64,000 nucleotides of DNA from Haliotis rufescens (lineage: Eukaryota). The notes below the pieces were generated by a model that ran no database searches, was not told where the DNA came from, and saw only the letters and a program-made list of their open reading frames with translations. The DNA lies in the NCBI RefSeq assembly GCF_023055435.1, contig NW_025963802.1, forward strand, positions 5,208,001 to 5,272,000, read 5' to 3'. The translations under genes were made by a program, and so were the position numbers. Below, in pieces: positions 6,269 to 34,854 of this stretch. How positions within the stretch are numbered: position 1 is the stretch's first letter; each line of letters begins with the position of its first letter.

Positions 6269-9200
6269 CTACCACTGGCATTTGATGGGGGATCCGTCAA
6301 GGCGTCTACTGCGCATGCTTTGTTTCTCGCCTGCTGTCCACGACTTTGACTTCATCCGGAAGTGACGTAATTGCTGAGAATAGGATTCGTGCACCATAGG
6401 CAGGTACGTTTGAGGCTCGCAGTGATTCTGAAAGATAGACAGGCGTTTGAATGTTGTTTATCAATAGTCATCAATTATGTACCAATTATGAGAAAAATGG
6501 CTCTGGCTGAAAATTGACAGGGCTATAATGAAAGGGTTAAGAACACTGTCAAATCAACTGCTGTACTTAGACGCATGTTAATGTGATTTGAAACATTATT
6601 ATGGTGGTATGTAAAACAACACGGAAGAAACTCCATTGTTATAACGCACCTGATGTTGTTCATAGAAGGCCTTGTACCCGCCATCCAGCAGGTACACTTC
6701 CGGGTAGAAGAGGAACGGGTAGCGGTCGCTGTTTAACTTCCGGTCCATTCTTCTCAAATGACGTAGTCTGATAAGGGAATCGGATATCAACTTAATGACT
6801 TACTTACTGAGATGAAATTATATTCAGGAAAATACGAAATATCTTTCAGTATGTAAGACAATATGATCAATGCCATCGCCCTTGTTCAAAATGCTATTTA
6901 TTAGCTGGGACAATTAATTGTACGGTTAATGAATATGAATATAATTACTGTGAAAATGTATACATCGGTTGTTGTAATATGAATAGGATCCGGTAAAACA
7001 TTCCATGGTAAGCTACGTGGCAATCTATGGTTGAGCTTCTATGGTCATCTGTATGACATTCTATAGTAGGCAGTATGACATTCTATGGTAAACTGTTGGG
7101 CATTTTATAAATGGTAATCTGTATGGCGTCCTATGGTCATCTGTATGACATTCTATAGAAGGCTGTATGACATTCTATGGTAAACTGTTGGGCATTTTAT
7201 AAATGGTAATCTGTATGGCGTCCTATGGTCATCTGTATGACATTCTGTAGTAAACTGTATGACAATCTATGGAAAACTGTTGGGCATTTGATAAATGGTA
7301 ATCTGTATGGCGTCCTATGGTAATTTTCATGACATTCTATAGTGAGCTGTATGACATTTAAGACTTAAGGCATTCACATAAGGAACAGAATTTATCTGTC
7401 AACGGCTTTATTATGAGAAACACAACGTAACGGAGTATATGCTTACTTCTTCATCAGCCGGATCATACATGAATTCTTTTCCTCGTGTGTGACATTTGAT
7501 AAGCTATATGACATTCTATATTAGGCTGCATAGCATTCTCTGGTAATCTCTGGCATTCTGTGGTAGGATGTATGACATTCTATGACCATCTTTGTGACGT
7601 TTTATGGTAAACTGTATGACGTTTTATGGTAAAGTTGTTACATGTATGGACCCATGTGGTAAACAATAAGGCATTCTGCGTAATCTGAGGCTGTGTACTG
7701 TAAGTTTGCAGCACTTTAATGTTGAATGGATGACATTCTTACAGTTTAGGTCCCCTCTCCGACGAGAACTCGCAGTGGAATATGAGGACATTCCTTTCAG
7801 TGGACACACTCCCTCGTTGAGCGGTGATTACATCCGTTATGAGAGCCTCGGTGTGAAGGTTTAGCGCTCCCTGGGAGGACATGAAATGAAATGGTTAGTT
7901 GAACCAGTAACACAAATTGTAAAGATGATTTTGACAGAGGTTTCAATATTGGATTGTATGGTACTTGTATGGAACAGTTTCTTTCCCTTTCGATGATATA
8001 AAAATGTTACCTCAATGTGTCCTCCTTCGTACTCATACGGATAACGACAATCAATAATTTGGTATCCGGAAATGACGTCATTGTATTTCCCTGCCAGTAG
8101 TTGACTGACTGTGAGGGGAGACACCGACTTCAGATCCTTGTGTCTCCCTTTGATTGTAGGGAGAGAGTGTGCCTACAAAGATAGAAAATATGTCTGTGAA
8201 ACTTTAGAAATCCTGCGCAAGTATGGGTTTGGGTTCAGTGAAACCTTTAACAAGTTATATACATATGATATCTGTCAGCACTGATGAAAACGCCTGATTC
8301 TATTTTGCAGATTTTGAAATCGAAATAAGATTCAGTGAGAAGCACTCGTAAAACCATTAGTTTCGAAATTATCTATGATCAACCGCACAAATCGGACAAA
8401 GGTTGTACAACTCGGCAATATTCCAACTATATGACAGGAGGTCTGCTTATAAGTCTAGACCAGACAATCCAATGACTGACACCATGAGCATCGTTTTGCG
8501 CAATTTGGATACATTTGTCGCCTTTTAGGTCTAGCCATTGTAATAAGTCACCAGTGTAACATTTGAGAATCTACCAGACTGACATCAAGCATGACATTTA
8601 CGTTCACAGACAAAGAGGGTTTAAACACATTTAATCGAATTGCTAAGATTGCCCATGACCAGAGTCTCGCCTAAACCTATTAAGGACTACTACTCTACGC
8701 TTGACAGGGACATTCCTATTATTCCGAACTCCGAACGTGATTATGGAGACAGGAACTATCTGAGGATCCCTATCAAAACTTGAGTTGTATACTTTGTTAG
8801 CTCAGCTTACCCTAGTTCCGTCCCCGATAAGGTTTGCCTCCTCACTCTCCATCCTCTCGACTGCTGTCTTCAGGGACTCCAGACACAAACTCTAAAAACA
8901 TACACATCTATTGTTAAACGCGGAAATTAAGCCTTCTGAAGAGGAAGACTCCAGGTGCATGTCATCCTCAATGTATCCTTTTCTATTGGAGTGAATACTC
9001 TGTTATTGTTGTCTGTTGTTTAACGTCGCATTTAGCAATATTCCAGCTACATGACGGAGGTCTGTAAATAACCGAGTCTGGACACTCGGCAGTGATTGAC
9101 ATCTTGAGGATCGTTCTTGTGAGTGAGTGAATGAGTGAGTATGGTTTTACGCCGCTTTTAGCAATATTCCAGCAATATCACGGGACACCAGACACCAGAA

Positions 9201-11517
9201 ATGGGCTTCACACATTGTACCCATGTCGGGAATCGAACCCGGGTCTTCGGCGTGACGAGCGAACGCTTTAACCACTAGGCTAACCGCCCGCCCGAGGATC
9301 GTTCTACGCAATTGGGACACGATGACATGCATTAACCACGTCAGCGAACCTGGCCACCCGATCCCTATGGTTTTACAAGCATAGTCGCCTTTTATGGGTT
9401 GCTAAAGACCTATTAGATTATATACAGGCGTCTCTGGTATTGAAAGAATATCGCTGAATGTGGCGTAAATTAATATTAACTCATTTAACGTTAATCAAGT
9501 CAGTGAGCCTAGACACCGCCTCTTACTACAAGCATGGAAGACAAATTCTAACTCGGATCGTCACGGATCGAATAAATACCCAGGACCCATTCGGTATTCG
9601 AACACATCGCTAAAAATAGCCGTCCAATCAGATTGCACTCATTTCCACACTTCGTGATAGGACAAATGGAGATGATGACGTCACATCCGAAACGAAGGCT
9701 TTGCTGCTAATGGGTGAGGGGTATTTACGGAGATATATTTCGTGGATAATCGAGGATGGCTGTATTTGAATGTGAAGAGTAGTTAGTTAAAAAGACAGAC
9801 ACTCTTCCTTCATTTGATTTGTTGTGTTTTGTTCTGTATATCAAGGTCTGTCAACTGAATATAAGAGGAGCGTTGTGGACGTCTGCAAGTTTATGAAACC
9901 CAACAATACGGGTATTGTGTTGACACACCAGGGATCCGAATCCACGATCATAGTATCATGACACGCCTAAGTGACGCAACTCTACATCGAAAATTGCGGT
10001 ACCTTACACGATTCGCAACATTTAGGGTTGATTAATAACTTGCTTGATAACGGTGTTAGAACCTACACGGAAACGTCGCTCCTAATTTTATAAAGAAGTT
10101 GTTTATCCATATATCTTATCCTTACTTAGTACTTTTAAATGCCTCTCAAAGAAAACATGTAGGTTATTTAACATTAACATAAATAAGCATGTTTTATTTT
10201 ATTACATAAAATCAGATATTGCCTTGAACTGAAGTCATATAGCGTTGCATCACGAGTGCAAATCTCAAGCCACGTGCTGACCGTGGATTTGTGGGAACGA
10301 ATGAGTGTCGCTACATCGTTTGAGACACTCAATGCCTATGAATACGTGACAAAAATAATCTTAAGAGATATAGGTATTACCTCATTGGGAATCGGCTTGA
10401 AAAGGAATTTTCTCGGTAAGTTCTGTGGTGAGTTATCGCCCCTTGTGGGCGTATCCTGTTCCTGAAAACAATAACACACATATGTATTCCACTTATCTAC
10501 ACCTGACGCCTATGTCTCCATGAATGTCTCTTTTTAAAAAAAAGAATTCTAAAAAAACCCGCTTTCAGTAACCAAATATTGATCAGGGTGTTAGAATAAC
10601 AATTCTATGGAAAAGTAACATTTTGACGCTGTTTTACAATGTACTTTTATGTGTTTGGGGAATTGAAAATAACGACAATGAAGTACATGTAAGTCTACTC
10701 AGAAAAGATAAAGGATCACCCGATTCTTTCATATTACTTCCCATTGTGAATTGTATATAAGTTCGATAAATCAACCTTTATCAGTTTCGTCAAACATGTA
10801 CTTAATGCTCAAGTGCATTGACAATTTCAATAATTCAGTAATGCTTCAGTTATTATAAAAGTATGGTTGGCTATTCCAGCAGATCAGCGTCCTGTGTACG
10901 TACCATGGCTGTGCTCTCGGGGGAGTCGATGCCACTGTCAGTGAAATCCTCCTCCAACTCACAGTAACCCGGGCAGGTGTTACGTTGTGGGGTCACGTGC
11001 CCACGACAGTCACGTGATCCACTCTCCACGTCAGCGTCACTCAATGGATGTGACGTACCCCGGCACTCCCCACCCAAGCTGGTGTGAGGTGTCGTCATGT
11101 GACGCATCTTGGCAGGGTGAGGCATACAGCAAGGGGGAGCCGAATCGTCGAACTATAACAAGCAAGATTAACGTGCTATTTGTATATGTATCATGTTTGG
11201 GAGAGGCATTCAGATAAGCAAAATTTGCTTGTTTGCCAATCCCTCCACTTTATGGAAATAAATATGTTTATAAGATGTTAAGAAAGCATGCCGCCTTTTA
11301 CCTCGTATATTAAAAATGTTCTTCCACATCACTACGATACTATGAATGATGGAAAAAGCTGGGCGTCGAATTAAAGTATACGAATATATTAAAAAACATT
11401 CAGTTCAGTTCAATATTTATTTTACTTGTTTGTTACTTTGACGCATTGCAATAAACAGTCATCTAGGTGGAAATAAACATGCACAGAAATACTCACCGCC
11501 AGACGTCTTCGTGGCAT
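6269..11517 (-). CDS. CDC25: Cdc25 M-phase inducer phosphatase, paralogue 1 (332 aa, 8 coding exons)
   Basis: Manually spliced, all GT-AG, frame-consistent exons: 11517-11497, 11152-10904, 10461-10381, 8891-8811, 8172-8011, 7870-7743, 6767-6650, 6427-6269 (999 nt including TAG). Encodes MPRRRLAF..., [95 protein letters not shown]: the Cdc25 rhodanese catalytic domain with HC(X5)R. Confidence 0.95.
7005..7700. repeat. About 22-bp tandem repeat (TATGACATTCTATGGTAAACTG) in a cdc25 copy 1 intron
   Basis: Visible degenerate array, interrupted at about 7365-7490. Confidence 0.85.
9118..9293 (-). mobile_element. SINE family A nested inside a family C element (9010-9415)
   Basis: 12-bp TSD GAGGATCGTTCT at 9106-9117 and 9294-9305; family C sequence continues on both sides. 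Confidence 0.85.
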
Positions 11518-16803: not shown

Positions 16804-16957
16804 ATGGATCTTTCAACATCAGCAACCATAACGACCAGTCCCGACCTCGTGACCGCGAAATGTCGGACCAAGAGTTCGTTAAGTGACGACGAAGACATGT
16901 CACGTGACAGTGGCTATGGGTCTCCAGACATGTCTGTAGGGGTGAGTATACGAACAT

Positions 16958-16988
<31 letters not shown>

Positions 16989-19900
16989 ACACACACACAC
17001 TAACATTAATTTCAAAATAAACACACAATGTCATTTTTACCTGACATGCCAAAAGCGCAAGACTATGGTATGGTCTTTTGTTAAGCGTTTGCTGTAATGA
17101 ACGCTTGTTGGGCATTAAATACAGTAGATTGAAAGGACATTTTACACACTGGCGATTTCTGGCAAGGTGAAGGCAACCCAAGGCAACCTCAGATTGAATT
17201 AAGATATGTATAAGATATGGGTACTTAGGTATAATACAATATATAACAAATACCCCAATTTATGTCCATACTTATATCCTCAATCTCAGAGAACCGGGGA
17301 TGTCCATATTCCCATCCTCTAACATAGTGATCCACTGATGTCCATATTCCCATCTCTAACATAGAGATCCACTGATGTCCATATTCCCATTCTATAACAT
17401 AGAGATTCACTGATGTCCATGTTCCCATGCTCTAACATAGAAATTCACTGATGTCCATATTCCCATCCTCTAACATAGAGATTCACTGATGTCCATGTTC
17501 CCATCCTTTAACATAGAGATCCACTCATGTCTACATTCCCACCCTCTAACATAGCTCCACTGATGTCTATTTTCCCATCCTCTAACATGGAGATCCACTG
17601 ATGTCCATGTTCCCATGCTCTAACATAGAGATTCACTGGTGTCCATATTCCCTCTTTAACATGGAGATCAACAGATGTCCATGTTCCCATCCTCTAACAT
17701 AGATATCCATTGATGTCTACATTCCCATGTCCATATTCCCATCCTCTAACATAGAGCTCCATCTCTGCAGGTCTTCTCCCTGGAGACACCCGAGACCAGG
17801 GCACCAAAGAGGAGTTTTGACATCACTCAAGCCAGGAGGTCGCTGTTTTCTTTAAAAAGATCACGCACCGATTCTGTTGACGACAGCGACGACGACGACG
17901 GACCACGATGTGAAAAACGCCAACGACCCTTCATCGATGACGTTGACGAGGGCGATGATGAGGTATGCACCTATTTTATTCCAGTGAATCAATCATTTGT
18001 TACACTTGGGACTGGTCGCTGGAATGCCAAAGCAATTCGACCCATCCTCAATGCATGTCAGCTGCTTAATTCTCTCTTCTGGTTGGTATGAACATCCCAT
18101 TTCATAGTCTGTATAAATATTTGTAATATTCCAATGCTTTAAGAACAAATTGAAACGCTAGTTGCATCACAGTTTGCGTTAAGCAAAACTACGACCAAGT
18201 TGATGTAATATTTGATGTGGAATAGTCGATGATTTCTGTGATGACAATTAAGACCTTAGGGGACAAGGGGGGCCCAGTCGTGTAAGGCGCCGGAATTCTC
18301 TGTGAAGAGTTGCGTCCCTTGGGTACACCAGAAACCTCTGATAGTATTCGAATCACGATTCGCCCCGATTATTTTTCTGTTTTCTTTTTTTTGCACCATA
18401 CCCATGCTCGTGGGTTTCACTCCCACATGAATCTGACAAACCGTGATGCACCTGGAATACTGTTCAAACGGCGTTAAACCCAACTCACTCACTACACAAT
18501 TATAGAGAAATTTTATACATCAGACATGACATGGTTTTTAAGTCGGAGCAATCACGCGGATCGTTTCGGGGTTTGGTATTTCTACTCCCGGAATGAACAG
18601 ATTCGAGTGACTGCTCCATTACGAACACCACACATGATATAATGTCATCACCATAGATGAGGTCTACATATACATACATATACATACATTTACATATATA
18701 TATATATTTGCATTTGCATAATTACATTTGAAACTCTAGGTATTCCTGGCGGACGTTACGTCAGATGTCGTGAAAAAGGCCGTTGACAAGATGGAGATCG
18801 ACAGAAGTCTTGTCGGGGACGGATCACAGGTACATTGACGGATTTTACTTTGGGTATCTTTGACATTTACACCGGAATCTGCTTTTAGACCATTAATTTA
18901 TAGCGGTTTCTTGAAGTTCCTTGTTCTTATAACATTTTAATCATAATTGATAGATTCATGTTTGACCCAATGTTCAGAAGTGATTTAGCTTACTGCAGGT
19001 TACAAAAATGACATATTTTGTGTCGAAGTATTTTCTTAATACGAGGTTTTGTGGATAGTACTATTGGAATTCCGAAAAGTTTATAAGCCAGAGGCCCATA
19101 ATAACAATACTGGATAAATGGAGAGTGATTCACAGATGACAGCATAATGTCAATTTTATGTCTATTTGTGTATTTCTCAGGAATAAATATTTTCCTCAAC
19201 ATAGTAGAGATTACAAATAAACAGAGTGATATTCATCTTCAATGTAGGATAAATTACAGATTCTACAAGTTCCATTAACGGTTCGTTAACTGTTAATTCC
19301 TGATGTAATTACAGTTATTGGTTTAACACCTACGCAGAAAGACAGGTTGGTTGGTTTGTTGTTTAACGCCGCACTCAGAAAAAGGCAGGTAGTGGTATTC
19401 CGCGTATTAGGAGATAAAGAGTGACGTATTTCGTTTATTGATGTAACGTATTCATTTTGATGTGACGGATTGGTATGGTATGTTGGTATGACGTATTTCA
19501 TGGAATGGAATGGTACGGTGTAAATGTTGGTATGACGTATTTCAGGGAATGGTAGGGCGCAGTGTAATGTTGGTATGACATTTCAGGTAATGGTGTGATG
19601 CAGTGTATATGTTGGTATGACGTATTTCAGGTAATGGTAAAGCGCAGTGTAAATGTTGGTATGACGTATTTCAGGTAATGGTAGGGCGCAGTGTAAATGT
19701 TGGTATGACGTATTTTAGGTAATGATACGGTGCAGTGTAGGTATTGGTATCATGTTTTCAGGTATTGGCTAACGAATTTCAGATATTGGTATGATATTTT
19801 ATACGTAAGTATGGTGATTTCAGGCATTGGTATGACCAATTCCAGTAAATAGTAGGCTGATGTGTAGGTATTGGTATTATGACAGCTATTTACATGACAT

Positions 19901-21547
19901 TTCATATATTATGGGGTAGTATAGGTATTCGTATGACAACTTTATTTCAGGCGTAAGTATGACTTATTTCAGATTCAGGTTTTCGTATGATACATTTCAG
20001 GTAATGGTAAGCAGCGGTGTAGGTATTGGTGTTGCGTATTCAGGTATTGGTTTCATTATTTCAGGCATTGGCAGAAATTGGCACTTTGGTAATTTGGTAT
20101 TTGTATGGCGTATTTCAGGTATTTGTATGAGGTATTTCTGGTAATAAGCTACAGTGTTAATGTTAGTATGACAATTCAGCTAATAAGCTACAGTGTACTC
20201 CTACTTCAGATAATAAGATGTAGTGTAATACTCGGGTATTGGTATGATTTACTTCAGGTAATTATAAACTCGGGTGTACATACTGGTCCGTCTCTGTGCA
20301 CGGAATTAAAACCACCAATTGTGTTTGCAGACACACTGTCTCCCGACAATGGAAGGGAAACATAAAGACCTCAAGTCAGTGTCTCCAATAACCGTCAGTC
20401 AGCTTCTAGCTGGGAAATACAATGACGTCATTTCCGGCTACCAGATCATTGACTGTCGGTATCCGTATGAATACGAAGGCGGACATATTGAGGTCAGTAT
20501 CAATGTGGATGTAAAATCGGCCAATTGCAACTAATTGAAAATATATTTATTTTTTGTAATGGTAACAATCACCACATTAATAACATCATTCTAAAAACGA
20601 CACATTATGTATATTTTATATTTTTTCCTTTCAGGGGGCACTTAACCTCTTTAACGAGGCCCTTGTCACGGAATTAGTCACAAACGAGCAAGGGAGGCAG
20701 TCAACCGAAAGAAGCATCCTCATTTTCCATTGTGAATTCTCCTCTGAGAGGGGGCCTAAATTGTAAGTGATTCAGTTTGTTCAGTTGAGATAAAGAGGTG
20801 GTTAAAGTGAAACTCGTTAAACCGGACCTCGTTAATCCGAACATTCCGTTTTCCGGCCCGTTATCAGGAACAATCCTATGTATATTTTGTTGCGATATTT
20901 CTACGTACCCGTGTCTCGTTAACCTCAAAATTGGAGGCTTATTAATCAGAACGATCTCGTTAAAAACGAGTCCATCCATAATAACCAGGTTTCGTTATAG
21001 TGAAGGTTACAATCGGTGCATTCCTTAATATTACAAATGTCCGAATTTCATTGAAATACGGTATGTTACAGACTACGCCATCTACGAAGCTTAGACCGGA
21101 AGGTGAACAGTGACCGCTACCCTTTCCTCTTCTACCCGGAAGTGTACCTGCTAGATGGCGGTTACAAGGCCTTCTTTTCAAAACACCAGGTATGCTGAGA
21201 AATCGTTTTTCATAGGTCGAAGGACGGCTATTTAAGTTATTGATGGTTGTCTCTACTGGTACGCTGTACCTACGGAAGAAGGTAGGCGGCACTCTGTATA
21301 ATTGGCAGTAAAACCCCGCACAACGGAATGTCATAACGGCATGTTACAACGGAAATATATTAACATTTAATAATTTGATTTGCAGGACCAGTGTGAGCCT
21401 CAGACGTACCTTCCCATGCTGCACCACGATTTTAGCTCTGCATTACGTCACTTCCGCTCTACCAAGTCCCACGCAGTGCGAGAAAGAAAGAGAGCATTTC
21501 AAAGAAGACAGGTTTTGGAAATGTCACCCTCTGCTTTCACGCTGTGA
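16804..21547 (+). CDS. CDC25: Cdc25 phosphatase, paralogue 2 (329 aa, 7 coding exons)
   Basis: Exons 16804-16941, 17771-17962, 18740-18829, 20331-20492, 20635-20762, 21072-21189, 21386-21547 (990 nt including TGA), all GT-AG and in phase. Motifs [57 protein letters not shown]. Probable 5'UTR exon at 16474-16516; AATAAA at 22399-22404. Confidence 0.95.
17298..17762. repeat. About 38-bp minisatellite (ATGTCCATATTCCCATCCTCTAACATAGAGATCCACTG)
   Basis: About 12 units, ending immediately before the 17771 splice acceptor. Confidence 0.9.
19430..20270. repeat. Degenerate tandem repeat of about 42 bp (GTATGACGTATTTCAGGTAATGGT...) in a cdc25 copy 2 intron
   Basis: Visible array. Confidence 0.8.
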
Positions 21548-23193
21548 AAATGTTACTACGATTACCTAGATGGTATAGAAGATGACGGAATTGGTTCAGA
21601 GAATTGTTTCGTCCAATATAGTCATAGAAAAAATGTGACTTTCTTTATCTGGTAGATCTAGCTGTCCACGTGAAGTGGACGCTGCCCCAAAGCTTTATTG
21701 GGTGTAACGGCGTGGGGCTATTGAACTTTGCATTTAGCTATTGTGTAGCAGTAGTAGGAGTTCAGGGAATGTACGGATGTTTGGATATTGTGGGGAAGTA
21801 GCAGTGCTTGTTGAAACTGTTGTTTACTCAGATTGTTGTGAGTTGTTGGACTTGTTGAACTGTTGTAATGTATTTTGCTAGTGCAACGTGGTCGAGTGCT
21901 GTGTTGAGAATGTCGACCGATAGCTGCGCGTAGATCACATCCTCATGTTAATAACATGTAACTTATGGGGACCACATCTGTCATTATTTATTCATGAAGG
22001 TTGAGACTTATTTATTGAGCGGATAAAATGTACTTTGTCGGTCGCTATCTTAGTCTACTGTACGGATTTATACATTCAAAAGCAACTATTCATAAAATGC
22101 AAGAGTATTTCCAGGGATGAATGCAAATGTATTGGGGATGTATGTTTGTTAACCTCTTGTCGTAGTAGAGGGTGATTACCAACGATAGAGACCAACAACA
22201 TGTTCCCGTAACTAGTCCTCCAGCATTTGTGCTTCTGTAATAAAAAGTATATAACTCGATCCCAGATAAGAATACGGTGCTATTTCATGCTATTTACATA
22301 TCAAGGTTTGCGACATGTCTTCTGTTGTTTGTATTTAACGCAATGCTTTAATGTCCATTATAGATAATGATTTGCTTGTATACTTTATATTTACTGTCAA
22401 TAAAAAATATAAACCTATTTAAACTGTTTTTCTGCTTTATTCAACCATACTGTTTTCATGGCGCGTCATCGCCTACCACTATTTAGTTTCCCTATCATGC
22501 ATAGTATACTGAAATGTTTGATGTCGACCTTTTTTGAAATTATGCGTTACAAATTTACAAAATATTGATTTAAATAAATTGAAATAAAGCTTTTGCTAAA
22601 TTTAAGTCTTTTGGGGATTTACATACATGTAATTGTAGTTAGATACATTAAACCTTTAGATAAATTAGGACGTACAGTTTTCTCCCCTTAGCGAGATGAA
22701 GTTGTTGTTCACCGCCGTACTCAATATTCCAATACTAAGTCTTCCGAGAGGCGGAAGTTTTAAACATACGGGTGTTGATAAGTGTAATAAAACTACAAAA
22801 GCACATCAGAGTTTTCTTGCTTATGGGGTAATCAAATGGTTTGTTGCCTTTCCTAAGTCCAAGTATGTCACTATTTGATTGTGATTAATAATTATGAAAC
22901 GTCAACGCCAGAGAATAACAAGTATCGATGTTCCGCCGGGGGTAAAAGGCAAAATAAGCAATCATATGCAGTACAAATATGTCAAAACATATTTATATTC
23001 TATATAGCCATCAAGAACACACGCCACACAATATATGTTCTTTTCGAATGTTAATAAATCTACCAGTTTCATCTAAATCGTGACCAGGCTGAAATATTGG
23101 CAAAATAGCTGTGAATCGAGATCAGTCGGAATCGTAAATAAACATCCTCAGTTTTCTTATTATTGCGAAAATTGTTTTCTCTACAAACCGTTG

Positions 23194-23475
23194 GGGGACA
23201 CATGCGGCCCAGTCCTCTGAAGCCACCGCGATTCGCTGTGCAGAGTTGCGTCCCTTGGGCACGCCAGAAACCTGTGATTGTGGGTTTGAATCCCGGTTCG
23301 CCCCAAATATTTTTCAAGGATTGTCAGCACCATAACCGTGCTCGTGGGTTTCATCGAAGTGGTAAACGTTCGAGACCTGCATCTCTTCGGGCTTTCCTCC
23401 AAAATTAAGCTTACACGCCTTGATATAACTGGAATAATGTTAAAAGCGGCGTTAAACCCAACTCGCTGACTCACA
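23194..23475 (+). mobile_element. SINE family B
   Basis: TSD CTACAAACC(G/A)TTG; same consensus. Further copies at 18258-18493, 59145-59395, 2477-2592 (3' part) and 52640-52785 (partial). Confidence 0.85.
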
Positions 23476-24101
23476 CTACAAACCATTGATAGATTAAATG
23501 CCATGTTTGTTTCAAACCATGCAGGTTATTTCCACATTTACTTACTACACGATTTGAATACTGTTTCAGACATTATTAAAGGGGACATGGGTGACCCGGA
23601 GGTTTTATATTGGTTTAGAGCAGTCGTGATCACAAGAAAGGACAAGACAAAATGATGCACAGCCGGGTCATACCAAAAATATGTCGGCATTGAGGAGAGT
23701 CGACTACATAAGTGCAATAACTTGATGCAATGTTAAATCCCACTTCACCTCATCTCACCCCAGAAAAACCATTGGGATTGCACAAAGTAGGAACAAGACC
23801 ATACTCTGCATAGTTGAAAGAAACATCAGGACCATAGAAACTTTTGCTGATGGCTGGGTAAGCAAACATTACGAGCCCACAGTATGGAGTAGAGAGTATA
23901 GTTGTTGATACTGCTTTTAGCGTTGGGCCAAAACAGAAGCAAACTTTACTAAATCAGAAAATGCTTTAAATTTTACATCGCAGTTACATCTGCAGTTACA
24001 TCGTTAGACAGAAATCAATTTCTTTACATGTTCCACAATATCTTTAATTTCAGTAACCAACATTTTCTGTACCAACACCATTTCATCCAAGTTGCGCAAT
24101 T

Positions 24102-25000: not shown

Positions 25001-27140
25001 TATCCCAAAGGAGAAACTGCATTTATCGATCCATGATGCGTTTGTTAATTATCGTGATGACGATAGACATAGTTACATGTTCAGAATAAATTGTCAATAA
25101 AGAAAACAAATGTCATCTGTAGTTTACCGAGGAAGCAACATGTGAAATGCTCGACTCCCTCATTGATAACATCTATGTGAATTTGGAGGATAAGACATTT
25201 AGATGGACAAGTACATGTAGGTAGACATTTTAGTAGGTATCATCTTGAGCATTCATTGTGATCAGTGGTACAACCTTCAAGGTCTCAGGGAAACCTTCAA
25301 ATGTTTTATGTTAGACATATGGAGGACATTTCCACATTTGACATATCCGTGATAAAAATGATGTCCGATGCATTTCCCTATTTCAACATGTACCATGTGT
25401 CCTGTGTTTTTTTCAGGTGAACAATTGACTTGTGTTTGTGATGGGTGCCACTTGTGGGGCAGGATATTCTAAACTTTTCGTGAACACCTGGTATCATCAC
25501 TATTTGATAATGATTCATGGACACAAGGTTATGACATAATCAGAATTTACAGTGGATTCAGCATTTAGAAGAGATTTCTTGAACCTACGTTTATTTGTTA
25601 TTATCATTATAATTTTTTTTCAGTCTTTTATGTACCACCCCTTCACCTGTCATTGGCACATGTCTTGTTATTCATCCACTTGCCACTCTTTAGAGAGGGT
25701 ACAGTTTACAACCTCTTCACATGTTTTAGTCACATTTGCAATGTGTCCATCGACTTGCCGCTTTTTCGACCTGGTTTATTGGGTGTTTGTTTGTTTGTTG
25801 TTTACCGCCGCACTCAGTAGTATTGCAGCTATATGGCGGCGGTTTGTATGTAATCGAGACTGGACCACACAAACCAGTGATTGACATCATGAGTATCGAT
25901 CTACGCAACTGGGATACGATGACGTGCATTAACCAAGTCAGCGAGTCTGACCACCTGGTCCCGTTAGTCGCCTATTACGACAAGAATGGGTTGCTGAAGA
26001 CCCATAGAAAGAATATAGCTGACTGTGGCGTAAAAAACATGAACTCATTTAACCCTTTAGTAAACTTACATTTTTCATAAACTGTTAACGTGGGCACACA
26101 TATCTTTCACTTCAGTCATTTAATGCTTCAATTATGTGTATAATCGTTGTAACGAAATAACTGAAGGTCTCCACTCGCATAGGTTTCGGTCTTTCATGAG
26201 TCTTTAAAGGAACATGTTGCAGAACATGGAGTTGGCAGCTCTTTGTCTGGTCCTGTTTGGTGTGGCGACGCATGCAATCTTTAATTGGTGCTGTTGCTAT
26301 TTAACTACATGTACTGTGACCCAATCCCTACAGATAATTATATTATATTGTCCTCTATGTCTACCTACTGTCCGATTACAAACTGGCCACTGTCTTTCTC
26401 GCTTGCCCTGCACAAACAATGTAACGAGCTGTCTATTTGTTCCACAGCCTATTTCTAATTTCTAGCCGTTACCTAATACAATTTATACCCCGGGATTTAT
26501 TCCAACATCAGTTACCTTTTTTGATGTCCTACCTGGATTATTACTCGGGGATAATCTCCTCTCAGCCCGGTATAGAAACGCCGTACACCCAAGCCACAGC
26601 TGTTGATCCCCAAGCTTGAGCGCTGGTAACCCACGAGGTGCTAGCATCCTATAATTGCTCCATTTTAGACTGGATGTGTTGTTTCAGAGTTTCAGGGGCT
26701 GTTTGACTCAAAATAAAGTAATTAAGCTGAAGTGTTAGCGGTAGTGTGCAGTAGATTGTATACGTAATCAGGTCATTGATATTGTTACACCAGCACACGT
26801 ATATATACAGTATGGGAGGCAGGAGGGTACATCTTTCTTCACTTGTGTCTGGCAGGGACAGTAACTTGAAAAAACCGAACACTTTTACTCAATTAGAAAG
26901 ATACGACTAAGGGTAAGGGTTCACCTCTTAAAAAGAAGTGTTTATTTTTTTATCTTCGAAGAAATAACGTTTTTAAATTTCCTACAACACACGTGATCCA
27001 TATAAAATTTAGTCACAATGAATGTGTCATTTAATGCATCACAATAATGCATCGTTGCATGGTGACATATATTCTTTGTTATTAACCAATATTTTTGTGA
27101 CGCAATTTGATAATTATTTTCAATTATTTTTCAGCTTAAA

Positions 27141-29421
27141 ATGATCCCACTACCAGTGTTCAGCATGGTCAGACTTTGCCTTGACAGTCCTGATCGGGTG
27201 ACATCAGGTCTTGGTATTCATGAAGATGCTGTAGTTTTGCCACGCAGCCTCACTTTCGCTGATGACGAGGACTCACGTGACAGCGGTTTCGAATCTCACG
27301 GGAGTGACACGGAGGTAAATATGCATGTCCCGACAGTTTTTGTTATTTCCACGGAACAACATAAAATATTTGTTTGTGGTTACTAATATGAATAAAGATA
27401 ACATATCTCCGTTAAAACATCTTTAATAACTGAGCAGATAGAACACGCTCAAATTCCGGTAATATACATATTGATAATTTCACTTTCAGGTGTCTCCAAG
27501 CAACGATTCCTGGTCGTGTAGAACAATCACAGACTTCAGCCCAGTTAGAAAATATTTATTCCCGCCAAAACGGCTACATGATGAGGATGACAGTCCCGTG
27601 GCAAAGAGATCCAGATGTGATGACGTCACGGAACATAAGGGCAAGCAATGTGTTTCTGAATCACCCGAATCCATCAAATCAGCGGTGGACAAAATGGAGA
27701 CGGAAGTCAATCTGATTGGCGATGGCTCAAAGGTATTGACATTTGTACAACAAATACCAATATTCCTCACTAGTGTATACACTATTCACTACTCGTTCTT
27801 GGTAGTTTTAAATTTGGAAGTTCTTACTCTAACGGTAAACGTTATCCGACGTTAATTATTTTCGGTTCATCATGTTGTGAATGCATAATGAAGTCATCAT
27901 TTGTTATCCAGTGTCACAGACTCCCGACCATCACAGGCCGACACAAGGATCTCAAGTCAGTGTCTCCACGCGCAGTCAATCACCTTCTGACAGGCAAATA
28001 CGATGACGTCATTTCCGGGTACCAGATCATCGACTGTCGTTATCCGTATGAATATGAAGGTGGCCATATTGAGGTATTTGTTTATTCGTTTGCTTGAATA
28101 AAATGTTTGAATCTGGATTAAATCAATATGGTAGTTGTAGAGATAAAACATATCCATACTAACGTTCATAAAAAAAATTGAAGACAAATTATTCTCATGA
28201 TCATCGTTCTTACAGGGTGCCATTAATCTCCACAATGAGGCTCAGATCACGGAGTTCGTCACCAGTTTACGGTGGAGGGAGTCCACCAAACGGAACATTC
28301 TCGTCTTCCACTGTGAATTCTCATCAGAGAGAGCACCCAAACTGTAAGTCATCATGCTTGTGTAACTTTCACTGCTCTCTGGTGCACATTTCGGAACATT
28401 TATCTTTTGCTGATATGGTAATCAGTTACTTTCGACATTTCGAGAGAAATCAGATAAGTACTGGGTTGCGTTAACGGTCTACCTTCCAAACCGAACATAG
28501 ACACACAAATATGAAACTATATCTGCATATTTGTTTGTCTGTTTGACGCCGCACTCGGCAATATTCCAGCTATGTGACGGAGGTCTGTAAACAATCGATT
28601 CTGGACCAGACAATCCAGTGATTGATACCATGAGCATCGATCCACGTAATTGGGATACGATGACATGCATCAACCAAGTCAGCGAGCCTGACCACCCGAA
28701 TATGTTAGTCGCCTCTTACACCAAGCATAGTAATGAGTTGCTGAAGACCTATTCTACCCCGAATCTTCACGGGTCTATATCTGCATGACTTACATCGTGC
28801 CGTGCTGTTCTCAACGGTAATACATGTAACATTAACATGAGAGGGTCAAATTCCCCAGCTGACACCAAATATGAATGTTAAAAGAGTCCTGAGTTTATTA
28901 CAAAGTATAATATTCTCCAACTGATACAATTATTCTTTAACTCAGATTACGCCATCTACGGAGCTTAGACCGGAAGCTGAACAGTGACCGCTACCCATTC
29001 CTCTTCTGCCCGGAAGTGTACCTGCTGGATGGTGGGTACAAGGCCTTCTATGAACAACATCAGGTACGTTGCACATTTCACAAAGAGACAGATTTAATTA
29101 TTATTATTTCAGGAAGTAATTACATTCCAATAGGGTCTTGGGAGGTTAGAACACTTCGGAGCACAATATCTGTTGCTCTTTATATGAAACATTTCGGAAA
29201 GCTGTTTTTATTTTAACATTTACAATCAATAAATACTGACAATGTTTTTGTTCTTTCCTCAGCGACAGTGTCAGCCCAACACCTACATTCCCATGCAGCA
29301 CCATGACTACGCCAGTCAACTACGTTATTTCCGGTCCAAGTCGAACAAGGTTGCGAACAAAAGACACTTGCGCAGACGTAATTTAGAAATCGATGTTTCA
29401 CCACTTAAATGTTCATTCTGA
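27141..29421 (+). CDS. CDC25: Cdc25 phosphatase, paralogue 3 (327 aa, 6 coding exons)
   Basis: Exons 27141-27314, 27490-27732, 27912-28073, 28216-28343, 28946-29063, 29263-29421 (984 nt including TGA). Motifs [53 protein letters not shown]; AATAAA at 29541-29546. The start codon is the first in-frame ATG after the acceptor at 27134. Confidence 0.93.
28529..28775 (-). mobile_element. Short retroelement family C (non-tRNA head, (AAAC)n tail)
   Basis: TSD TATATCTGCAT; head GACCCGTGAAG...GTAAGAGGCGACTAA; tail GCTGGAATATTGC.GAGTGCGGCGT.AAAC. Other copies at 8410-8530, 9010-9570, 25785-26003, 49370-49600 and 60245-60498. Confidence 0.85.
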
Positions 29422-32396
29422 TTTTGACATCATTTAAATATCATTGTTGACATTGTTGAAATTTATTCATTGTTAAATAGTTGTATTTTTATGTGTTGAT
29501 TATTTTCTGCATTTTAGTGCTGTATGTTTAAAGACCTTAAAATAAAGTTTTAAATAATTGTACATATGTACGTATATCTTTCTTTATCCCTGACGGTATA
29601 TGCCAACGATGTGTGGGAGCTCTAAAGATAAATATCATACTCTCTTTAGTTCAGGCTATCATCTACTCTATCTGGTTATAACGAGTCGCCTTATTGCGAT
29701 ACCATCTAATAAAAAAATCACGTGATCAAATTGAGCGCTTCCTGTCTGAGCACAGACACATGCTTCTCATTGTTTCGGCAAACTCCGTGTCAACCGAGAC
29801 ATTTTGACATGTTCGTCTCTAATCTATGCGGCACTACCTATATATATACGTGTATCGTGAACCTCAAATGTATAAAAGACAGTCTGCATTTATGTAAGTA
29901 TAATCTAAATCAACAAAGAACATGTTATTCATTTTAATATTTATTATTAATTATATTTGTAAGCGAAATGTGTGCGACAGATAGTCATTGCTACTTAATT
30001 AACCAAACAAGAAATACGAAGACGTTCGTCTCGTTATAAGTGTTAAAGGTTTTACGAATGTACAGTCTGAACCTTTGCGGTTTTACAGTAAATAACAGTA
30101 CCATTGCCCGTCTCTCGGCCATTTTATCAACTTGGTACCGTCTTTGCGCAAATGGGCCATACGCACATTCTGATTAGTTTCTCGCCGAAAAATATCTATA
30201 TTAAGAGACCGAGTATTCTTGCAGTTTACAGAAAGGGACGTGTGGCGACGAATGGCTCTAATATGACCGAACATCCAGATGTAACTTATGTTTCTGAAGA
30301 ATTATTATTCAGCTGCATTAACTGAGAATTAAAAACAACAAAACCAGAGAATAATCAATCATTATATACCGAAACAGATTCCACTCGGCGCTAAAAGGCA
30401 ACACAGTGCTGGAAATTAATGAAGGGATCAATGGAAATTATTGATTATACCTGGTGCAACGTAAAGAAAAAAATGTAATCAATATCTGCGCCGTCTAAAA
30501 GTATAGCCAACTTTGGAGATATATGTTGCGAGACCGTCTCTATGTTTGTGAGACTTGAATATTCTTTGGCTTGGGGTGTTTTCCCGAATTTAAAACAGTT
30601 GAATTTGGGTTAAATATTTAACCTTGTTTCGTTATTGGATATCTACCATCAGGCATACGTGACGTCTCACAGATTAGAGTAGCTTCCATTTGGCAAAGGA
30701 CAATTACTCCAGGAAGCCGACCGACGGGATAACTGAAACTGACAAAATTATGTATCCTTTTTGTCTACACGGCAGATACACTATTGTCTAAACAAGCTTC
30801 AGTTCGAACTATAAGTACCGTTGTAATAATCCGACTGACTTATCACTGACCTTGTCACGTAATTTATTAATGCGCAGATTCCAGTAAAACCTGCAATGTT
30901 TAGGTATCTCTTGTGAGAGACGTTTGCATTTAAGAACGACTTTATATGAAAAAGAGGTTATTATGCATGTGTATGTTGGAATGGTAAATATCCTGTATTT
31001 GGAATAAATACCATCCCAAAACACACACGTATGATAACTTCTATGTGTTTAACATACTTACACAACCAACATTTTCAAGCTTGAGTAATTCCCACCAAAT
31101 AACAATGATTCCGGCGAATGGGTCTAAGATATTTGTCATTATAGAATAGAGAATTGACTTTAAGTTAAAATAACATCTTTTATTTGCAATTTGATCATTA
31201 TTATTCAGGCCAAAAACGAATTTACTTTGTAATTTGAATGCTGCAACTGACTAATGTATTCAAGTGTTAGAATATCATTTTTTAAAATGATTTGTTACCT
31301 TTGCGCTTCTTGTTGAACAGTTTGTCTGAAACACACGCCTACTGCTAATAATCCAATATCATTCATGTTCATCTATGGGATATTTAGCGCCAGGCAGACT
31401 TTCGACCAGCTTGGGTCTAAAAACAGCGATTCTGGTCGACCAGCTTGGCCTGAGGATTAAAATTAACGATAGGCTTAACCAGGGAACATCTATATTTTTT
31501 ACTGGAATTATATATTCACAGGTTCTCTTTTTCAAGAGTACTGTTATTTAAGGTTACACATGACGCACACAAATGAAAAATACGAAGACATACATTCGTT
31601 ATATTGTGATGACATTTACTGATGGGCACAACTGAAATGAAATGTCATAAAAGGTATTCATTGATGGAAATTTAGGTTCACTTAAATGACATTAAGAGAA
31701 TTCGTTGATCGACGTATTAGATATTAATTTAAATGACATTAACGTTATCGTTGACTGACATAATTGTTAATTAAATTGATTGATGGTAACAGCTGCATTT
31801 GCAAATTGCTGCTCAGACAGTTGAACTGTACGAACACCTAAAGAGGCCGATTTCAATGACAGTCAATATCGTTCGCATTTTGGTGTTGAGATGGTCAATC
31901 TTGATAAAAGCATGCTCACGCGCTTGCAGTGTGTCGATGTCAGTCCCTGGGTCGGCATGACGGTGGTAAAGGGGATAAAGGCCAACTGTAACATTGCTTT
32001 GAAAGTTGACAGTCTAGCCCGGCGCCACACACACACACGTGTCGGTGCATGTGATGTCGTTGGGAGATTAACACGAGTAATCTGCCTCCCAACCATAGGA
32101 TGAATTCGCCAGGAGCACAACCGTGTTCACACCAAGCGAGGCAGCTAATTGTCCAGCTCTAATGCGTCAGTGTTGTTCTTGGTTAGTTGTTCACATAGGA
32201 ATAATTTGTGGTTGCAGAAACATGTTCAGTCGATCAACGAGTGTTGTGATTGTTGGGAAAACATGTTGGTTTAAGCAGGTATATATGTAGCCTACGCTTA
32301 AGACCAGCATCACTTCCTCAACTTAAGTCTTGCCATCAAGGGAAACATAAACACCTTTTATCCTTACAGAATCTTCCTCAGCACTCTTTGCTCACC

Positions 32397-34854
32397 ATGA
32401 CCAGAAGGAAACTGACGGTAAGAATGAGAATCAAAGAATACAATAATACATGGACGTTTTTTAAATGTTAATGATCTCAATGACTTCAGCATTCTTTCAT
32501 CAACTCCCTCTCGACAACTAATAATGATTACGAAAGAGGCTTGTTTATCATGCTATTATTGTACTTTTTTCAGTTTGCACCAGCAATTGAAGTTGACGCG
32601 ACGTCACAGACGCAAGTCTCGGACGAGAGCATCACTGACATCATGGTGTCACCGAGCCTCACTTTCGATGATTCACGTGACAGCGGTTTTGAGTCACAAG
32701 AGAGTGACAATGAGGTTTGTTTATTTGTTTATATGTTTTCCGTTACATTGACAGAAATACACTTACTAAACGAGCAACTTATTTTATGCCTGGAAATTCC
32801 CATCTGGAGCCCATGTTTCTTACTGATGTTCATAATCCTGTTTCAGACATCACCAGTTCGCGGGGCACACCTTCCAACAAGTTGCAACCATGGGTTTGGG
32901 AAATGCATCCTTTCAGGAAACACGTCGGACGACGATATATTCAATGAAGTTTCATTCGGGGAAAGTAAATCAGCCAAGGCGGAAGTGACATCAGAGACAA
33001 TGAAAACAGCTGTTGACCGGATGGAGAATTTAGATGATCTGATTGGTGACGGGTCAAAGGTTAGTTGATGGTAACCATGACACCATCTGCTCCATGAAAA
33101 ACGTCTACTAAATTAATTTGAATATAATTCAGAGCTGCATTAAAGGTGCATTTAATAAGGTTGCGGGGTCACGGGTGGCCCAGTCGTCTAAGGCGCCGCA
33201 AATCGCTGTGCAGAGTTGCGTCCCTTGGACACGCCAGAAACTTATGCTTGTGGGTTCGAATCCCGCTTCTCCCCGATTATGTTTCTAGGTTTGTCTGCAC
33301 CATACGCGTGCTCGTGGGTTTCACCGAAGTGGTAAACGTCTGAGACCTGCATCACTTCAGGCTTTCCTCCCACAATAAACTTACACGCCGCGATATAACT
33401 GGAATACTGCTAAAAGCAGCGTTAAACCCAAATCACTCACTAATAAAGTTGCTGTGTATTGTGTTTCAGATATGCAACCTTCCGACCATAACAGGCAGAC
33501 ACAAGGATCTTAAGTCAGTGTCTCCACTCACAGTCAGTCAACTTCTGGAGGGAAAGTTCGATGACGTCATCTCCGGGTACCAGATCATTGACTGTCGGTA
33601 CCCGTATGAATATGAAGGCGGACATATTGAGGTACGAGTGTATACTGAAAGCTACTGTCATTTATTTTTCACAAGAAAGAAATTTGACTTAAACGCTTGT
33701 CATGGGAGACAATCTGATGCATTTACTCGAATAACCCTGTTCACCATATTTGTTCTCCAGGGATCAGTGAACCTTCACAACGAGGCCCTGATCACGGATT
33801 TAGTCACCAGTCTTCGTGGGGGAGAGTGCTTCCAACAGAATATCCTCGTCTTCCATTGTGAATTCTCATCAGAGAGAGGGCCAAAACTGTAAGCATGATT
33901 CTGTATCACTTGAACTATTATTGCTTCATGTCATACAATACAGTCAGCCCCGTCTGTAAGGACCAACCTCCCTGGCGTAGTGAAGACACCTGAAGGTCGG
34001 TTAAAGATGGCACTTGTTGTTACCCTGCCAGACCGGTTTGGAGTCTGTATCCATGTTAACTGTCGGTATCCATGTTAACTGCGGCATGGTATCTCAGTGA
34101 GCTGGTGCAATAGGTCCCGACTCACACACGTGCGAGAACGTCGCTATTAAGTAACCATGAATGCGACGTTAAAACTCCTTTTCACGTCACCTCGTTGGTG
34201 AGGAAGTCGGGTATGAAACAGGGGTAAAACAAATGACCCATTTATGAAAATAGGATTATATGAATTTCCTTTTGTTGTTTGTTATAGGGTCTGTTTTATT
34301 TTAGATTACGTCATCTGAGAAACTTAGACCGGATGCTGAACAGTGACCGCTACCCGTTCCTCTTCTACCCGGAAGTGTATCTGCTGGATGGCGGATACAA
34401 GGCCTTCTATGAACAACATCAGGTAACATGGTTCATTTGATTATATGTGTAAAACAACAGAAGCATTTTAGGAGCTTTTTTTTGGTGGCATCAGGTGCAG
34501 ATATCATTATAATAACCTACAATGCAAGGATGTTCTTCGGCAATCAGATTTACCACAAACAGAAAGGGGCAGTTATTGAGAGACGTGATGACTCTGTACG
34601 TACGTAAGATCGGTTCAACAACAAACAACAATGAACCGCCAACTGTTGATGCGTGGTAAAGTTCACTCACTCAAATATATTTGCAGGTTCAATGTCAACC
34701 AAGAAACTACCTTCCCATGCTGCACCAGGACTACGCGAAAGAACTAAGTCACTTCCGGGTAAAAACAAAATCATTGAAAGCTGGGAAGAAACAGAGCATG
34801 CACAGTCGACGTCATCATATGAATCTGTCCCCGATTAAGTTTTCCTCGTTATAG
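32397..34854 (+). CDS. CDC25: Cdc25 phosphatase, paralogue 4 (316 aa, 7 coding exons)
   Basis: Exons 32397-32417, 32574-32714, 32847-33059, 33470-33631, 33761-33888, 34305-34422, 34687-34854 (951 nt including TAG). Motifs [61 protein letters not shown]. Confidence 0.95.
33165..33440 (+). mobile_element. SINE family B (tRNA-Leu-like head with long A-B box spacing)
   Basis: A box TGGCCCAGTCGTCTAAGG, B box GGTTCGAATCCC, TSD TAATAA(G/A)GTTGC, tail CTGGAATACTGCTAAAAGCAGCGTTAAACCC(ACTC)n. Confidence 0.85.

What the first reader, a model, noticed from the sequence alone, without database searches (positions are those of the whole stretch)
6269..34854. Tandem cluster of four intact, compact Cdc25 phosphatases with diversified regulatory modules
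Seen: four complete reading frames (332, 329, 327, 316 aa) within 29 kb, with no internal stops or frameshifts. The catalytic exons have identical sizes (162/128/118 nt). All keep HCEFSSER, the backdoor Cys of IDCRY, and the R/R/Y substrate-docking residues (LRHLR..DR..N.DRY, equivalent to Cdc25B R488/R492/Y497). The N-terminal regions are only about 125-145 aa and barely alignable. Established: Cdc25 activates CDK1; vertebrates have 3 unlinked genes (473-580 aa in human), Drosophila has 2 (string/twine) and C. elegans has 4 unlinked genes. Inference: a lineage-specific tandem set of stripped-down mitotic or meiotic triggers, each with different degradation, localisation and checkpoint inputs, possibly divided among oocyte maturation, spermatogenesis and cleavage. 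I know of no described tandem cdc25 quartet, but I cannot search.
Basis: partly seen in the sequence, partly recalled or inferred. Interest (0 to 1): 0.88.

Follow-up and report, generated by a model that had tools for sequence, protein, structure and literature searches.

The report
Four abalone Cdc25 genes, part of many
The window holds four intact, short Cdc25 cell-cycle phosphatase genes of the red abalone, but they belong to a much larger abalone Cdc25 expansion: about 20 more genes or fragments on the same chromosome and a roughly 225-unit tandem array on another.

Summary
Four complete Cdc25 genes lie at 6269-34854, one on the minus strand and three on the plus strand. Every junction is GT-AG, and each gene keeps HCEFSSER, the IDCRY cysteine and the R/R/Y docking residues.

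The genome is Haliotis rufescens. All four genes already have RefSeq models named 'M-phase inducer phosphatase-like'.

They are old paralogues under purifying selection (dS 0.66-1.3, dN/dS 0.13-0.27). Genes A and B have orthologues in H. cracherodii and H. asinina, and A also in H. rubra. A spliced gene A transcript junction was seen in one run. No RNA evidence was obtained for B, C or D.

The 'isolated quartet' reading fails. Chromosome C24 carries two more clusters (3 and 11 intact copies plus fragments), which this scan's first readers had already noted on other windows. It also carries two divergent compact genes and a canonical long cdc25 at 29.40 Mb. Contig C57 holds a 592-kb array of about 225 near-identical 2.6-kb units, each a whole cdc25 gene.

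Compact Cdc25 paralogues are common across molluscs. No paper describing the abalone expansion was found.

The parts
6269..11517 (-). Gene A, compact Cdc25, 332 aa, 8 coding exons
   Evidence: Exons: 11517-11497, 11152-10904, 10461-10381, 8891-8811, 8172-8011 (162 nt), 7870-7743 (128), 6767-6650 (118), 6427-6269 (includes the stop). All junctions are GT-AG and there is no internal stop. It is 97-99% identical to H. cracherodii XP_071089308.1 (P0019), and has orthologues in H. rubra (P0022) and H. asinina (P0259). The H. rufescens RefSeq model XP_046360613.2 is partial (202 aa). The spliced junction 6650|6427 was seen in run X1.
16804..21547 (+). Gene B, compact Cdc25, 329 aa, 7 coding exons
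   Evidence: Exons: 16804-16941, 17771-17962, 18740-18829, 20331-20492 (162), 20635-20762 (128), 21072-21189 (118), 21386-21547. All junctions are GT-AG. RefSeq XP_048249799.1 (P0258) is 331 aa and differs by two residues at the exon 3/4 junction. Orthologues: H. cracherodii P0024 (99%) and H. asinina P0023 (81-87%).
27141..29421 (+). Gene C, compact Cdc25, 327 aa (323 in RefSeq), 6 coding exons
   Evidence: Exons: 27141 (or 27165)-27314, 27490-27732 (or 27744), 27912-28073 (162), 28216-28343 (128), 28946-29063 (118), 29263-29421. RefSeq XP_048249800.1 (P0020) matches at 94-100% per exon. The nearest relatives are the copies at C24:2.515-2.543 Mb (dS 0.31-0.35).
32397..34854 (+). Gene D, compact Cdc25, 316 aa, 7 coding exons
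   Evidence: Exons: 32397-32417, 32574-32714, 32847-33059, 33470-33631 (162), 33761-33888 (128), 34305-34422 (118), 34687-34854. It is identical to RefSeq XP_048249801.1 (P0001) on the four exons that align cleanly, and the spliced model has the same length. PDB CDC25C/B/A match at E 1e-54 to 7e-47.
7754..7777 (-). Gene A active-site loop HCEFSSER (CX5R)
20728..20751 (+). Gene B active-site loop HCEFSSER
28309..28332 (+). Gene C active-site loop HCEFSSER
33854..33877 (+). Gene D active-site loop HCEFSSER

Best explanation
The locus holds four functional paralogues of a compact (about 320 aa) Cdc25 dual-specificity phosphatase in the red abalone, Haliotis rufescens.

Domain layout. Each protein has a rhodanese-fold catalytic domain with the CX5R loop HCEFSSER and the CDK-docking residues. 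In front of it is a short N-terminal region that carries a DSGxxS phosphodegron.

Inferred mechanism. As in all studied Cdc25s, they remove the inhibitory Thr14/Tyr15 phosphates from CDK1/2-cyclin to trigger M-phase or S-phase entry. The degron would allow SCF-betaTrCP-type destruction, as in human CDC25A. RxL-type motifs would allow cyclin docking: 'M.RR.L.F' in the mini first exon of A and D, and RxLF in the middle of the N-terminus of A, B and C. KRSR clusters in B and C would allow nuclear import.

Evolutionary position. The four genes are four separate, old lineages of an abalone-specific expansion of the compact molluscan Cdc25 clade. At least A and B predate the split of H. rufescens from H. 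asinina. The expansion also produced two younger clusters on the same chromosome and a tandem array of about 225 units on another.

What is shown: gene integrity, family membership by sequence, purifying selection, orthology, copy numbers, and one spliced gene A junction. What is inferred: enzymatic activity, motif functions, and any division of labour between germline and embryo.
For: - Intact models with GT-AG at every junction.
- PDB CDC25A/B/C hits at E 1e-54 to 7e-47 for D and 4e-17 for the 162-nt exon of B alone.
- Pfam Rhodanese above the cut-off for C, D and the A and B orthologues.
- [13 protein letters not shown] and the R..LR..DR..N..Y residues are present in all four and align to CDC25C.
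- dN/dS is 0.13-0.27 at dS 0.66-1.3.
- N-termini are 81-82% identical between orthologues from distant abalone species but only 26-35% between paralogues.
- The tree places each window gene in its own lineage, with starred orthologue clades for A and B.
- RefSeq models exist for all four.
- An X1 contig at depth about 300 joins the 118-nt exon of A to the last exon of A. The gene A-type HCEFSSER sequence occurs only once in the genome, which argues against an intronless DNA copy as the source.
- Clam oocytes carry several CDC25 transcripts (PMC4254928).
Against: - No enzymatic or genetic data exist.
- No contig from four runs lay on C-specific or D-specific exons. The one contig on C's 162-nt exon was unspliced and carried 9 mismatches. 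The tissue of those runs is unknown, and contigs cannot prove absence.
- D lacks the mid-region RxLF and KRSR motifs.
- Neither C nor D has a >=90% orthologue among annotated proteins of three other abalone species.
- The C-terminal '[10 protein letters not shown]' tail is kept in A but diverged in B, C and D.
- Run X1 is only guessed to be RNA, carries a different organism code, and shows 1 mismatch in 26 bases past the junction.
Confidence: 0.8

Rival explanations
1. One or more copies, most likely D or C, are silent relics or drifting towards pseudogenes. On this view the family turns over by birth and death, and these copies have simply not been hit by a disabling mutation yet.
For: - The family does shed copies. 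One copy at C24:2.52 Mb has a stop at the catalytic Cys codon. Five fragments lie in the other two clusters.
- 5 of 13 sampled C57 units have defects.
- No C- or D-specific spliced contig was found in four runs.
- D lost two N-terminal motifs.
- C and D have no annotated close orthologue in other abalone species.
Against: - C and D keep 6-7 coding exons open with all splice sites canonical, despite dS of 0.31-0.74 to their nearest relatives.
- dN/dS is 0.18-0.27.
- By relative-rate arithmetic from the distances, D's catalytic branch is not longer than C's.
Confidence: 0.13
2. The paralogues have left CDK activation. They would act on other substrates, or work as dominant regulators or decoys, for example by titrating cyclins, 14-3-3 or betaTrCP, rather than as mitotic or meiotic triggers.
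For: - Copy numbers are very large for a dose-sensitive mitotic inducer.
- The C-terminal tails, which in human CDC25B help substrate recognition (general knowledge), have diverged in B, C and D.
Against: The catalytic loop, the backdoor Cys and all three CDK-docking hot-spot residues are kept in every intact copy. That pattern is what selection for CDK-cyclin recognition predicts.
Confidence: 0.06
3. The four copies are assembly or haplotype duplicates of one or two genes.
For: None beyond their proximity.
Against: - Pairwise dS is 0.66-1.3, and N-termini are 26-35% identical.
- Separate orthologues exist in other species.
- The only N run is outside the genes (34948-35076).
Confidence: 0.01

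Closest known systems
Human CDC25A/B/C (PDB 1c25, 1qb0, 3op3)
   Same: They share the rhodanese-fold catalytic domain, the [10 protein letters not shown]5R loop and the IDCRY cysteine. The docking residues equivalent to CDC25B R488/R492/Y497 are present. The DSGxxS degron matches that of CDC25A, and there are RxL-type motifs. About 50% identity over roughly 190 residues.
   Different: The N-terminal region is 120-142 aa rather than about 300-400. There is no Pfam M-inducer_phosp (PF06617) signal and no RSPS-type 14-3-3 site was found by pattern. There is a two-residue insertion before the docking Tyr. The genes are clustered rather than unlinked.
Drosophila string/twine and C. elegans cdc-25.1 to cdc-25.4
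   Same: These are lineage-specific Cdc25 paralogues; in those animals they divide germline, embryonic and somatic roles (general knowledge).
   Different: Those genes are 2-4 in number and unlinked. Here there are four in 29 kb, plus about 16 further intact compact genes (3+11 clustered, 2 divergent) and a canonical long gene on the same chromosome, and an array of about 225 units on another contig. No expression partition has been shown for the abalone genes.
Compact 'M-phase inducer phosphatase-like' genes of other molluscs (seven CDC25 genes in Crassostrea gigas, PMC4254928; many RefSeq models in Mytilus, Mya, Mercenaria, Dreissena, pectinids, Patella, Lottia)
   Same: They have the same length class (about 280-350 aa) and the same domain, and they sit in the same clade, set apart from the long form. 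Several occur as multiple near-identical copies per species (member counts).
   Different: The window genes belong to a sub-clade that contains only Haliotis sequences. The copy number in H. rufescens exceeds anything I found reported.
Canonical long cdc25 of the same genome (C24:29.40 Mb, locus L036)
   Same: It has the same catalytic motifs, including HCEFSSER.
   Different: It has the long regulatory N-terminus that aligns with the 548-aa chiton protein, which carries PF06617. Its introns are much longer and its exon breaks differ. It groups with the chiton long forms, apart from all compact forms (support 96/84).

Membership tests
Cdc25 (M-phase inducer) dual-specificity phosphatases | Rhodanese-like catalytic domain | tested here: met
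   Pfam PF00581 at 47.6-51.5 bits (cut-off 22.2) for D (P0001), C (P0020) and the 97-99% identical orthologues of A and B (P0019, P0024). Single exons of A and B give 19.2 bits, below the cut-off because they are short.
Cdc25 (M-phase inducer) dual-specificity phosphatases | CX5R active-site loop, in Cdc25 the signature HCEFSSER | tested here: met
   Present in all four genes. The genome-wide pattern gives 227 hits against 0 in the control.
Cdc25 (M-phase inducer) dual-specificity phosphatases | Closest solved relatives are CDC25A/B/C over the whole catalytic domain | tested here: met
   All 12 PDB hits at E <= 1e-20 are CDC25A, B or C, with E 1e-54 to 7e-47, covering residues 105-297 of D. 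The 162-nt exon of B alone gives E 4e-17.
Cdc25 (M-phase inducer) dual-specificity phosphatases | CDK-cyclin docking hot-spot residues (CDC25B R488, R492, Y497) and the second Cys of IDCRY | tested here: met
   LRHLR..DR..NSDRYP and [14 protein letters not shown] are in all four. The alignment to CDC25C places the two Arg in register and the Tyr after a two-residue insertion. The numbering comes from my knowledge of CDC25B.
Cdc25 (M-phase inducer) dual-specificity phosphatases | Dephosphorylates CDK1/2 pThr14/pTyr15 and drives cell-cycle transitions | not testable with these tools
   This needs enzyme assays or complementation.
Canonical long Cdc25 (with Pfam M-inducer_phosp N-terminal region) | PF06617 regulatory N-terminus of about 300 aa with 14-3-3/Chk1 sites | tested here: not met
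   No PF06617 hit in P0001, P0020, P0019 or P0024. The N-termini are 120-142 aa. The long form exists separately at C24:29.40 Mb.
Haliotis-specific compact Cdc25 expansion | Falls inside the clade that holds only Haliotis sequences, with the shared exon sizes 162/128/118 | tested here: met
   Clade support is 99/95 and 93/78 after adding the C57 gene and the long form. Exon sizes are shared by all 18 intact clustered C24 copies.

The most novel reading that the evidence does not exclude
Abalone have turned the normally low-copy, dose-sensitive mitotic inducer Cdc25 into a high-copy gene family. It comprises four old, sub-functionalised lineages (this window), two younger clusters on the same chromosome, and a concertedly evolving array of about 225 units in which most units are intact genes. 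The array would work as a dosage device, comparable to tandem histone or rRNA gene arrays. It might supply very large amounts of Cdc25 mRNA or protein to oocytes and rapid cleavage cycles, or to spermatogenesis, in a broadcast spawner. The window genes would provide stage-specific control.
Probability: 0.3. Interest if true: 0.8.

Novelty: new member of a known kind. Interest (0 to 1): 0.55.

Why it matters
Cdc25 is a rate-limiting switch for entry into mitosis and meiosis. In model animals it is encoded by 1-4 genes, and its dose is tightly controlled. The red abalone genome has four long-diverged compact Cdc25 genes side by side, 16 more intact compact genes (3+11 clustered, 2 divergent), a canonical long form, and an array of about 225 units. 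It is a natural system for asking how a cell-cycle trigger tolerates or exploits massive duplication. It also allows tests of which short N-terminal motifs (degron, RxL, NLS) are enough for regulation. Finally, it may bear on whether copy number relates to oocyte maturation and cleavage in an aquaculture and conservation species. The quartet by itself is an ordinary part of this picture.

Tried and rejected
Synteny in H. cracherodii rests only on adjacent accession numbers (XP_071089307 and XP_071089308), which is weak.
- The PF06617 search of the genome found nothing, but it also rang in no control genome, so it is uninformative. The long form was found instead through the [11 protein letters not shown] pattern.
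- Read laying (one call, 6 kb, 27100-33099) gave no contig on C- or D-specific exons. Most depth fell on an abundant repeat in gene C's intron. This is not evidence of silence.
- Joined spliced models were not sent to any search tool. Searches used single exons by reference, natural open frames of the window, or RefSeq protein ids returned by the tools. The spliced models were built and analysed only in scripts.
- The C57 gene's annotation status could not be checked, because its spliced protein has no reference and its longest open frame is too short for the length filter.
- Haplotype artefact was rejected on divergence. Pseudogene status for all four was rejected on intactness and dN/dS.
- The Pfam hit 'Grass antifreeze beta roll' at 44897-46231 was rejected as an artefact of a 42-bp minisatellite.
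- Six literature searches found no description of an abalone Cdc25 expansion.
- The N run at 34948-35076 was left untouched.
Full report
**1. What is in the window**

A six-frame scan finds exactly four HCEFSSER runs. One is on the minus strand (7777) and three are on the plus strand (20728, 28309, 33854).

Translated comparison of the four loci shows the conserved exons. Extending each to splice sites gives catalytic exons of 162, 128 and 118 nt in identical phases in all four genes, followed by a terminal exon.

Using abalone proteins returned by the database searches as guides, I completed the 5' parts.
- Gene A (-) spans 11517-6269, with 8 coding exons and 332 aa.
- Gene B (+) spans 16804-21547, with 7 exons and 329 aa.
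- Gene C (+) spans 27141/27165-29421, with 6 exons and 327 or 323 aa.
- Gene D (+) spans 32397-34854, with 7 exons and 316 aa.

Every junction is GT-AG and there are no internal stops.

A and B are head to head, with start codons 5.3 kb apart. B, C and D follow in the same direction.

**2. Organism and annotation**

Gene D is identical, on the four exons that align cleanly, to 'M-phase inducer phosphatase-like [Haliotis rufescens]' (P0001, XP_048249801.1), and the spliced model has the same 316-aa length. That protein's contig length, 43,813,872, equals the length of the window's contig C24.

RefSeq also holds B (XP_048249799.1, 331 aa), C (XP_048249800.1, 323 aa) and a partial A (XP_046360613.2, 202 aa). 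The genes are therefore already in public annotation, under an automatic name.

**3. Family membership**

D matches the solved catalytic domains of human CDC25C, B and A at E 1e-54 to 7e-47. The 162-nt exon of B alone scores 4e-17.

Pfam finds the Rhodanese domain but no M-inducer_phosp N-terminal region.

All four keep [22 protein letters not shown] and LRHLR..DR..NSDRYP. In the alignment to CDC25C these fall on the catalytic loop and the docking residues, with a two-residue insertion before the Tyr.

**4. Selection and age**

Over the catalytic domain plus tail, pairwise dS among the four is 0.66-1.32 and dN/dS is 0.13-0.27. This rules out haplotype duplicates and argues for long-term constraint.

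N-terminal regions are only 26-35% identical between the four. Gene A's N-terminus is 82% identical to its H. rubra orthologue, and B's is 81% identical to its H. asinina orthologue. The regulatory regions are thus conserved within each lineage and diverged between them.

Shared ordered motifs remain.
- DSGxxS is present in all four.
- RxLF is present in A, B and C.
- KRSR is present in B and C.
- The 'AV[DE][KR]ME...L[IV]GDG[ST]' block before the catalytic domain is present in all four.
- A 21-nt first coding exon encoding M-x-R-R-x-L, followed by F, is present in A and D.

The functions of these motifs are inferred by analogy with human CDC25A.

**5. The quartet is part of a much larger family**

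A search of the whole assembly with one exon found many more copies. I fetched the regions and modelled the catalytic part of each copy. The family on C24 is as follows.

| Location on C24 | Content |
|---|---|
| 2.515-2.543 Mb | 3 intact copies, one with a stop at the catalytic Cys codon, one fragment |
| This window | 4 intact copies |
| 36.68-36.77 Mb | 11 intact copies, 4 fragments |
| 36.874 and 36.886 Mb | two divergent compact genes |

An exact HCEFSSER codon pattern occurs 227 times in the genome, with 0 in the control. Twenty of these are on C24, including a new locus at 29.405 Mb.

That new locus is a canonical long cdc25. Its exons align with the regulatory N-terminus of the 548-aa chiton protein, which carries PF06617, and its introns are long.

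This scan's first readers had already noted the 2.5-Mb and 36.7-Mb clusters on other windows.

**6. The C57 array**

The remaining hits, about 207, lie on contig C57. From 18,492,771 to 19,084,779 (592 kb) there is a head-to-tail array of units about 2.63 kb long (2,636 bp in the reference unit), which gives about 225 units.

Neighbouring units are 99.5-100% identical, and units hundreds of kb apart are about 97% identical. There are no N in the sampled stretches.

Each unit holds a whole 332-aa cdc25 gene in five exons. It has its own DSG degron, RRSLF and KRSR motifs, HCEFSSER and canonical splice sites. Its intron positions differ from those of the C24 genes.

Of 13 complete units sampled across the array, 8 are fully intact. 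I could not test expression of this gene.

**7. Phylogeny**

I built a maximum-likelihood tree of the catalytic region. It used all intact clustered C24 copies plus the copy with the stop at the Cys codon, abalone proteins from three other species, and outgroups.
- All clustered abalone copies fall in one clade that holds only Haliotis sequences. Support is 99/95, and 93/78 after adding two long rows.
- Within that clade the B lineage branches first, with H. cracherodii and H. asinina orthologues (100/98).
- The A lineage branches next, with H. cracherodii and H. rubra orthologues (100/99).
- The rest splits into D plus the C/2.5-Mb group, and the 36.7-Mb group.
- The window therefore holds four distinct old lineages, not four recent tandem duplicates. 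C's nearest relatives are 2.7 Mb away (dS 0.31-0.35).
- The long form groups with the chiton long forms, apart from all compact molluscan forms (96/84).
- The C57 gene is a long-branched, weakly supported sister of the C24 expansion (87/53).

Compact 280-350 aa Cdc25 paralogues, often several per species, are listed for many bivalves and gastropods.

**8. Expression**

One reads call was allowed, and I laid four contig sets on 27100-33099.

No contig lay on C- or D-specific exons, apart from one unspliced 229-nt piece with 9 mismatches. Most depth was on a repeat in C's intron at 28500-28800.

Two X1 contigs at depth about 300-350 lay on C's 118-nt exon with two mismatches. Their overhangs match gene A.
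- The upstream overhang matches gene A's own 118-nt exon exactly (6766-6746).
- The downstream overhang matches the start of gene A's last exon, with 1 mismatch in 26.

This is the predicted A junction 6650|6427. The gene A-type HCEFSSER sequence occurs only once in the genome, which argues against an intronless DNA copy, so the contig most likely derives from spliced RNA. Its organism code differs from the species label, so it may come from a close relative.

**9. Literature**

Six searches found nothing on abalone Cdc25.
- PMC4254928 notes seven CDC25 genes in the Pacific oyster genome. It also reports six CDC25 probes enriched in spawned clam oocytes.
- PMC2826372 notes aphid-specific Cdc25 duplication.

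**10. Verdict and limits**

The interpretation needs reframing. The cluster is the old, diverse core of a large abalone Cdc25 expansion whose extreme is the C57 array. 'Compactness' is a trait of a mollusc-wide Cdc25 clade that coexists with a canonical long gene.

Limits of this work:
- Joined spliced models were analysed only in scripts and were not sent to search tools.
- The N run at 34948-35076 was not touched.

Noticed in passing
G000:C57:18492771-19084779 (loci L029-L034): A 592-kb head-to-tail array of about 225 units of about 2.63 kb (2,636 bp in the reference unit), 97-100% identical to each other. Each unit holds a whole five-exon, 332-aa compact cdc25 gene. About 207 units keep exact HCEFSSER codons, and 8 of 13 sampled units are fully intact. 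Expression and annotation status were not tested. It deserves its own follow-up.
   Followed up: partly
G000:C24:29400001-29410000 (L036), minus strand: An apparent canonical long-form cdc25. Its exons align with the regulatory N-terminus and the catalytic domain of the 548-aa chiton protein P0057. It has long introns and a split version of the 162-nt exon. A full model was not built.
   Followed up: partly
window 6650-6715 (-), 21124-21189, 28998-29063, 34357-34422 (+): In the last 22 codons of the 118-nt exon, third-codon positions are 82-95% identical between the four paralogues, against 45-65% elsewhere. This points to local gene conversion or nucleotide-level constraint.
   Followed up: partly
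G000:C24:2521880-2522990 (L014): A cdc25 copy with a stop codon exactly at the catalytic Cys (H*EFSSER), plus a short deletion in the tail.
   Followed up: partly
window 28500-28800: A repeat inside gene C's intron is extremely abundant in all four contig sets, with summed depth of 1e5 or more and many rearranged joints. It is probably a highly expressed or high-copy SINE-like element. Related 'KAALNPN'-frame elements recur at 2430-2600, 23190-23480 and 33160-33440.
   Followed up: no
window 48972-49361 (+): An exon of a sodium:solute symporter (Pfam SSF, E 2e-10).
   Followed up: no
window 40639-41268 (+): An open frame with a DDE_3 transposase domain (E 2.5e-15), indicating a Tc1/mariner-type element.
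   Followed up: no
window 44984-46206: A 42-bp minisatellite with 29 copies that is open in several frames on both strands. It produces a spurious Pfam 'antifreeze beta roll' hit.
   Followed up: yes
window 900-2477; 36926-37611; 17299-17729; 19479-19768; 7037-7358: Further tandem repeats: a TG-rich array with 22/46/68-bp periods; a 52-bp repeat of 13 copies at 94% identity; and 38-, 44- and 92-bp repeats inside introns of genes B and A.
   Followed up: no
window 18829/20331 junction of gene B: The RefSeq model XP_048249799.1 has two extra residues (VM) between exons 3 and 4. I could not place them in the window sequence.
   Followed up: partly
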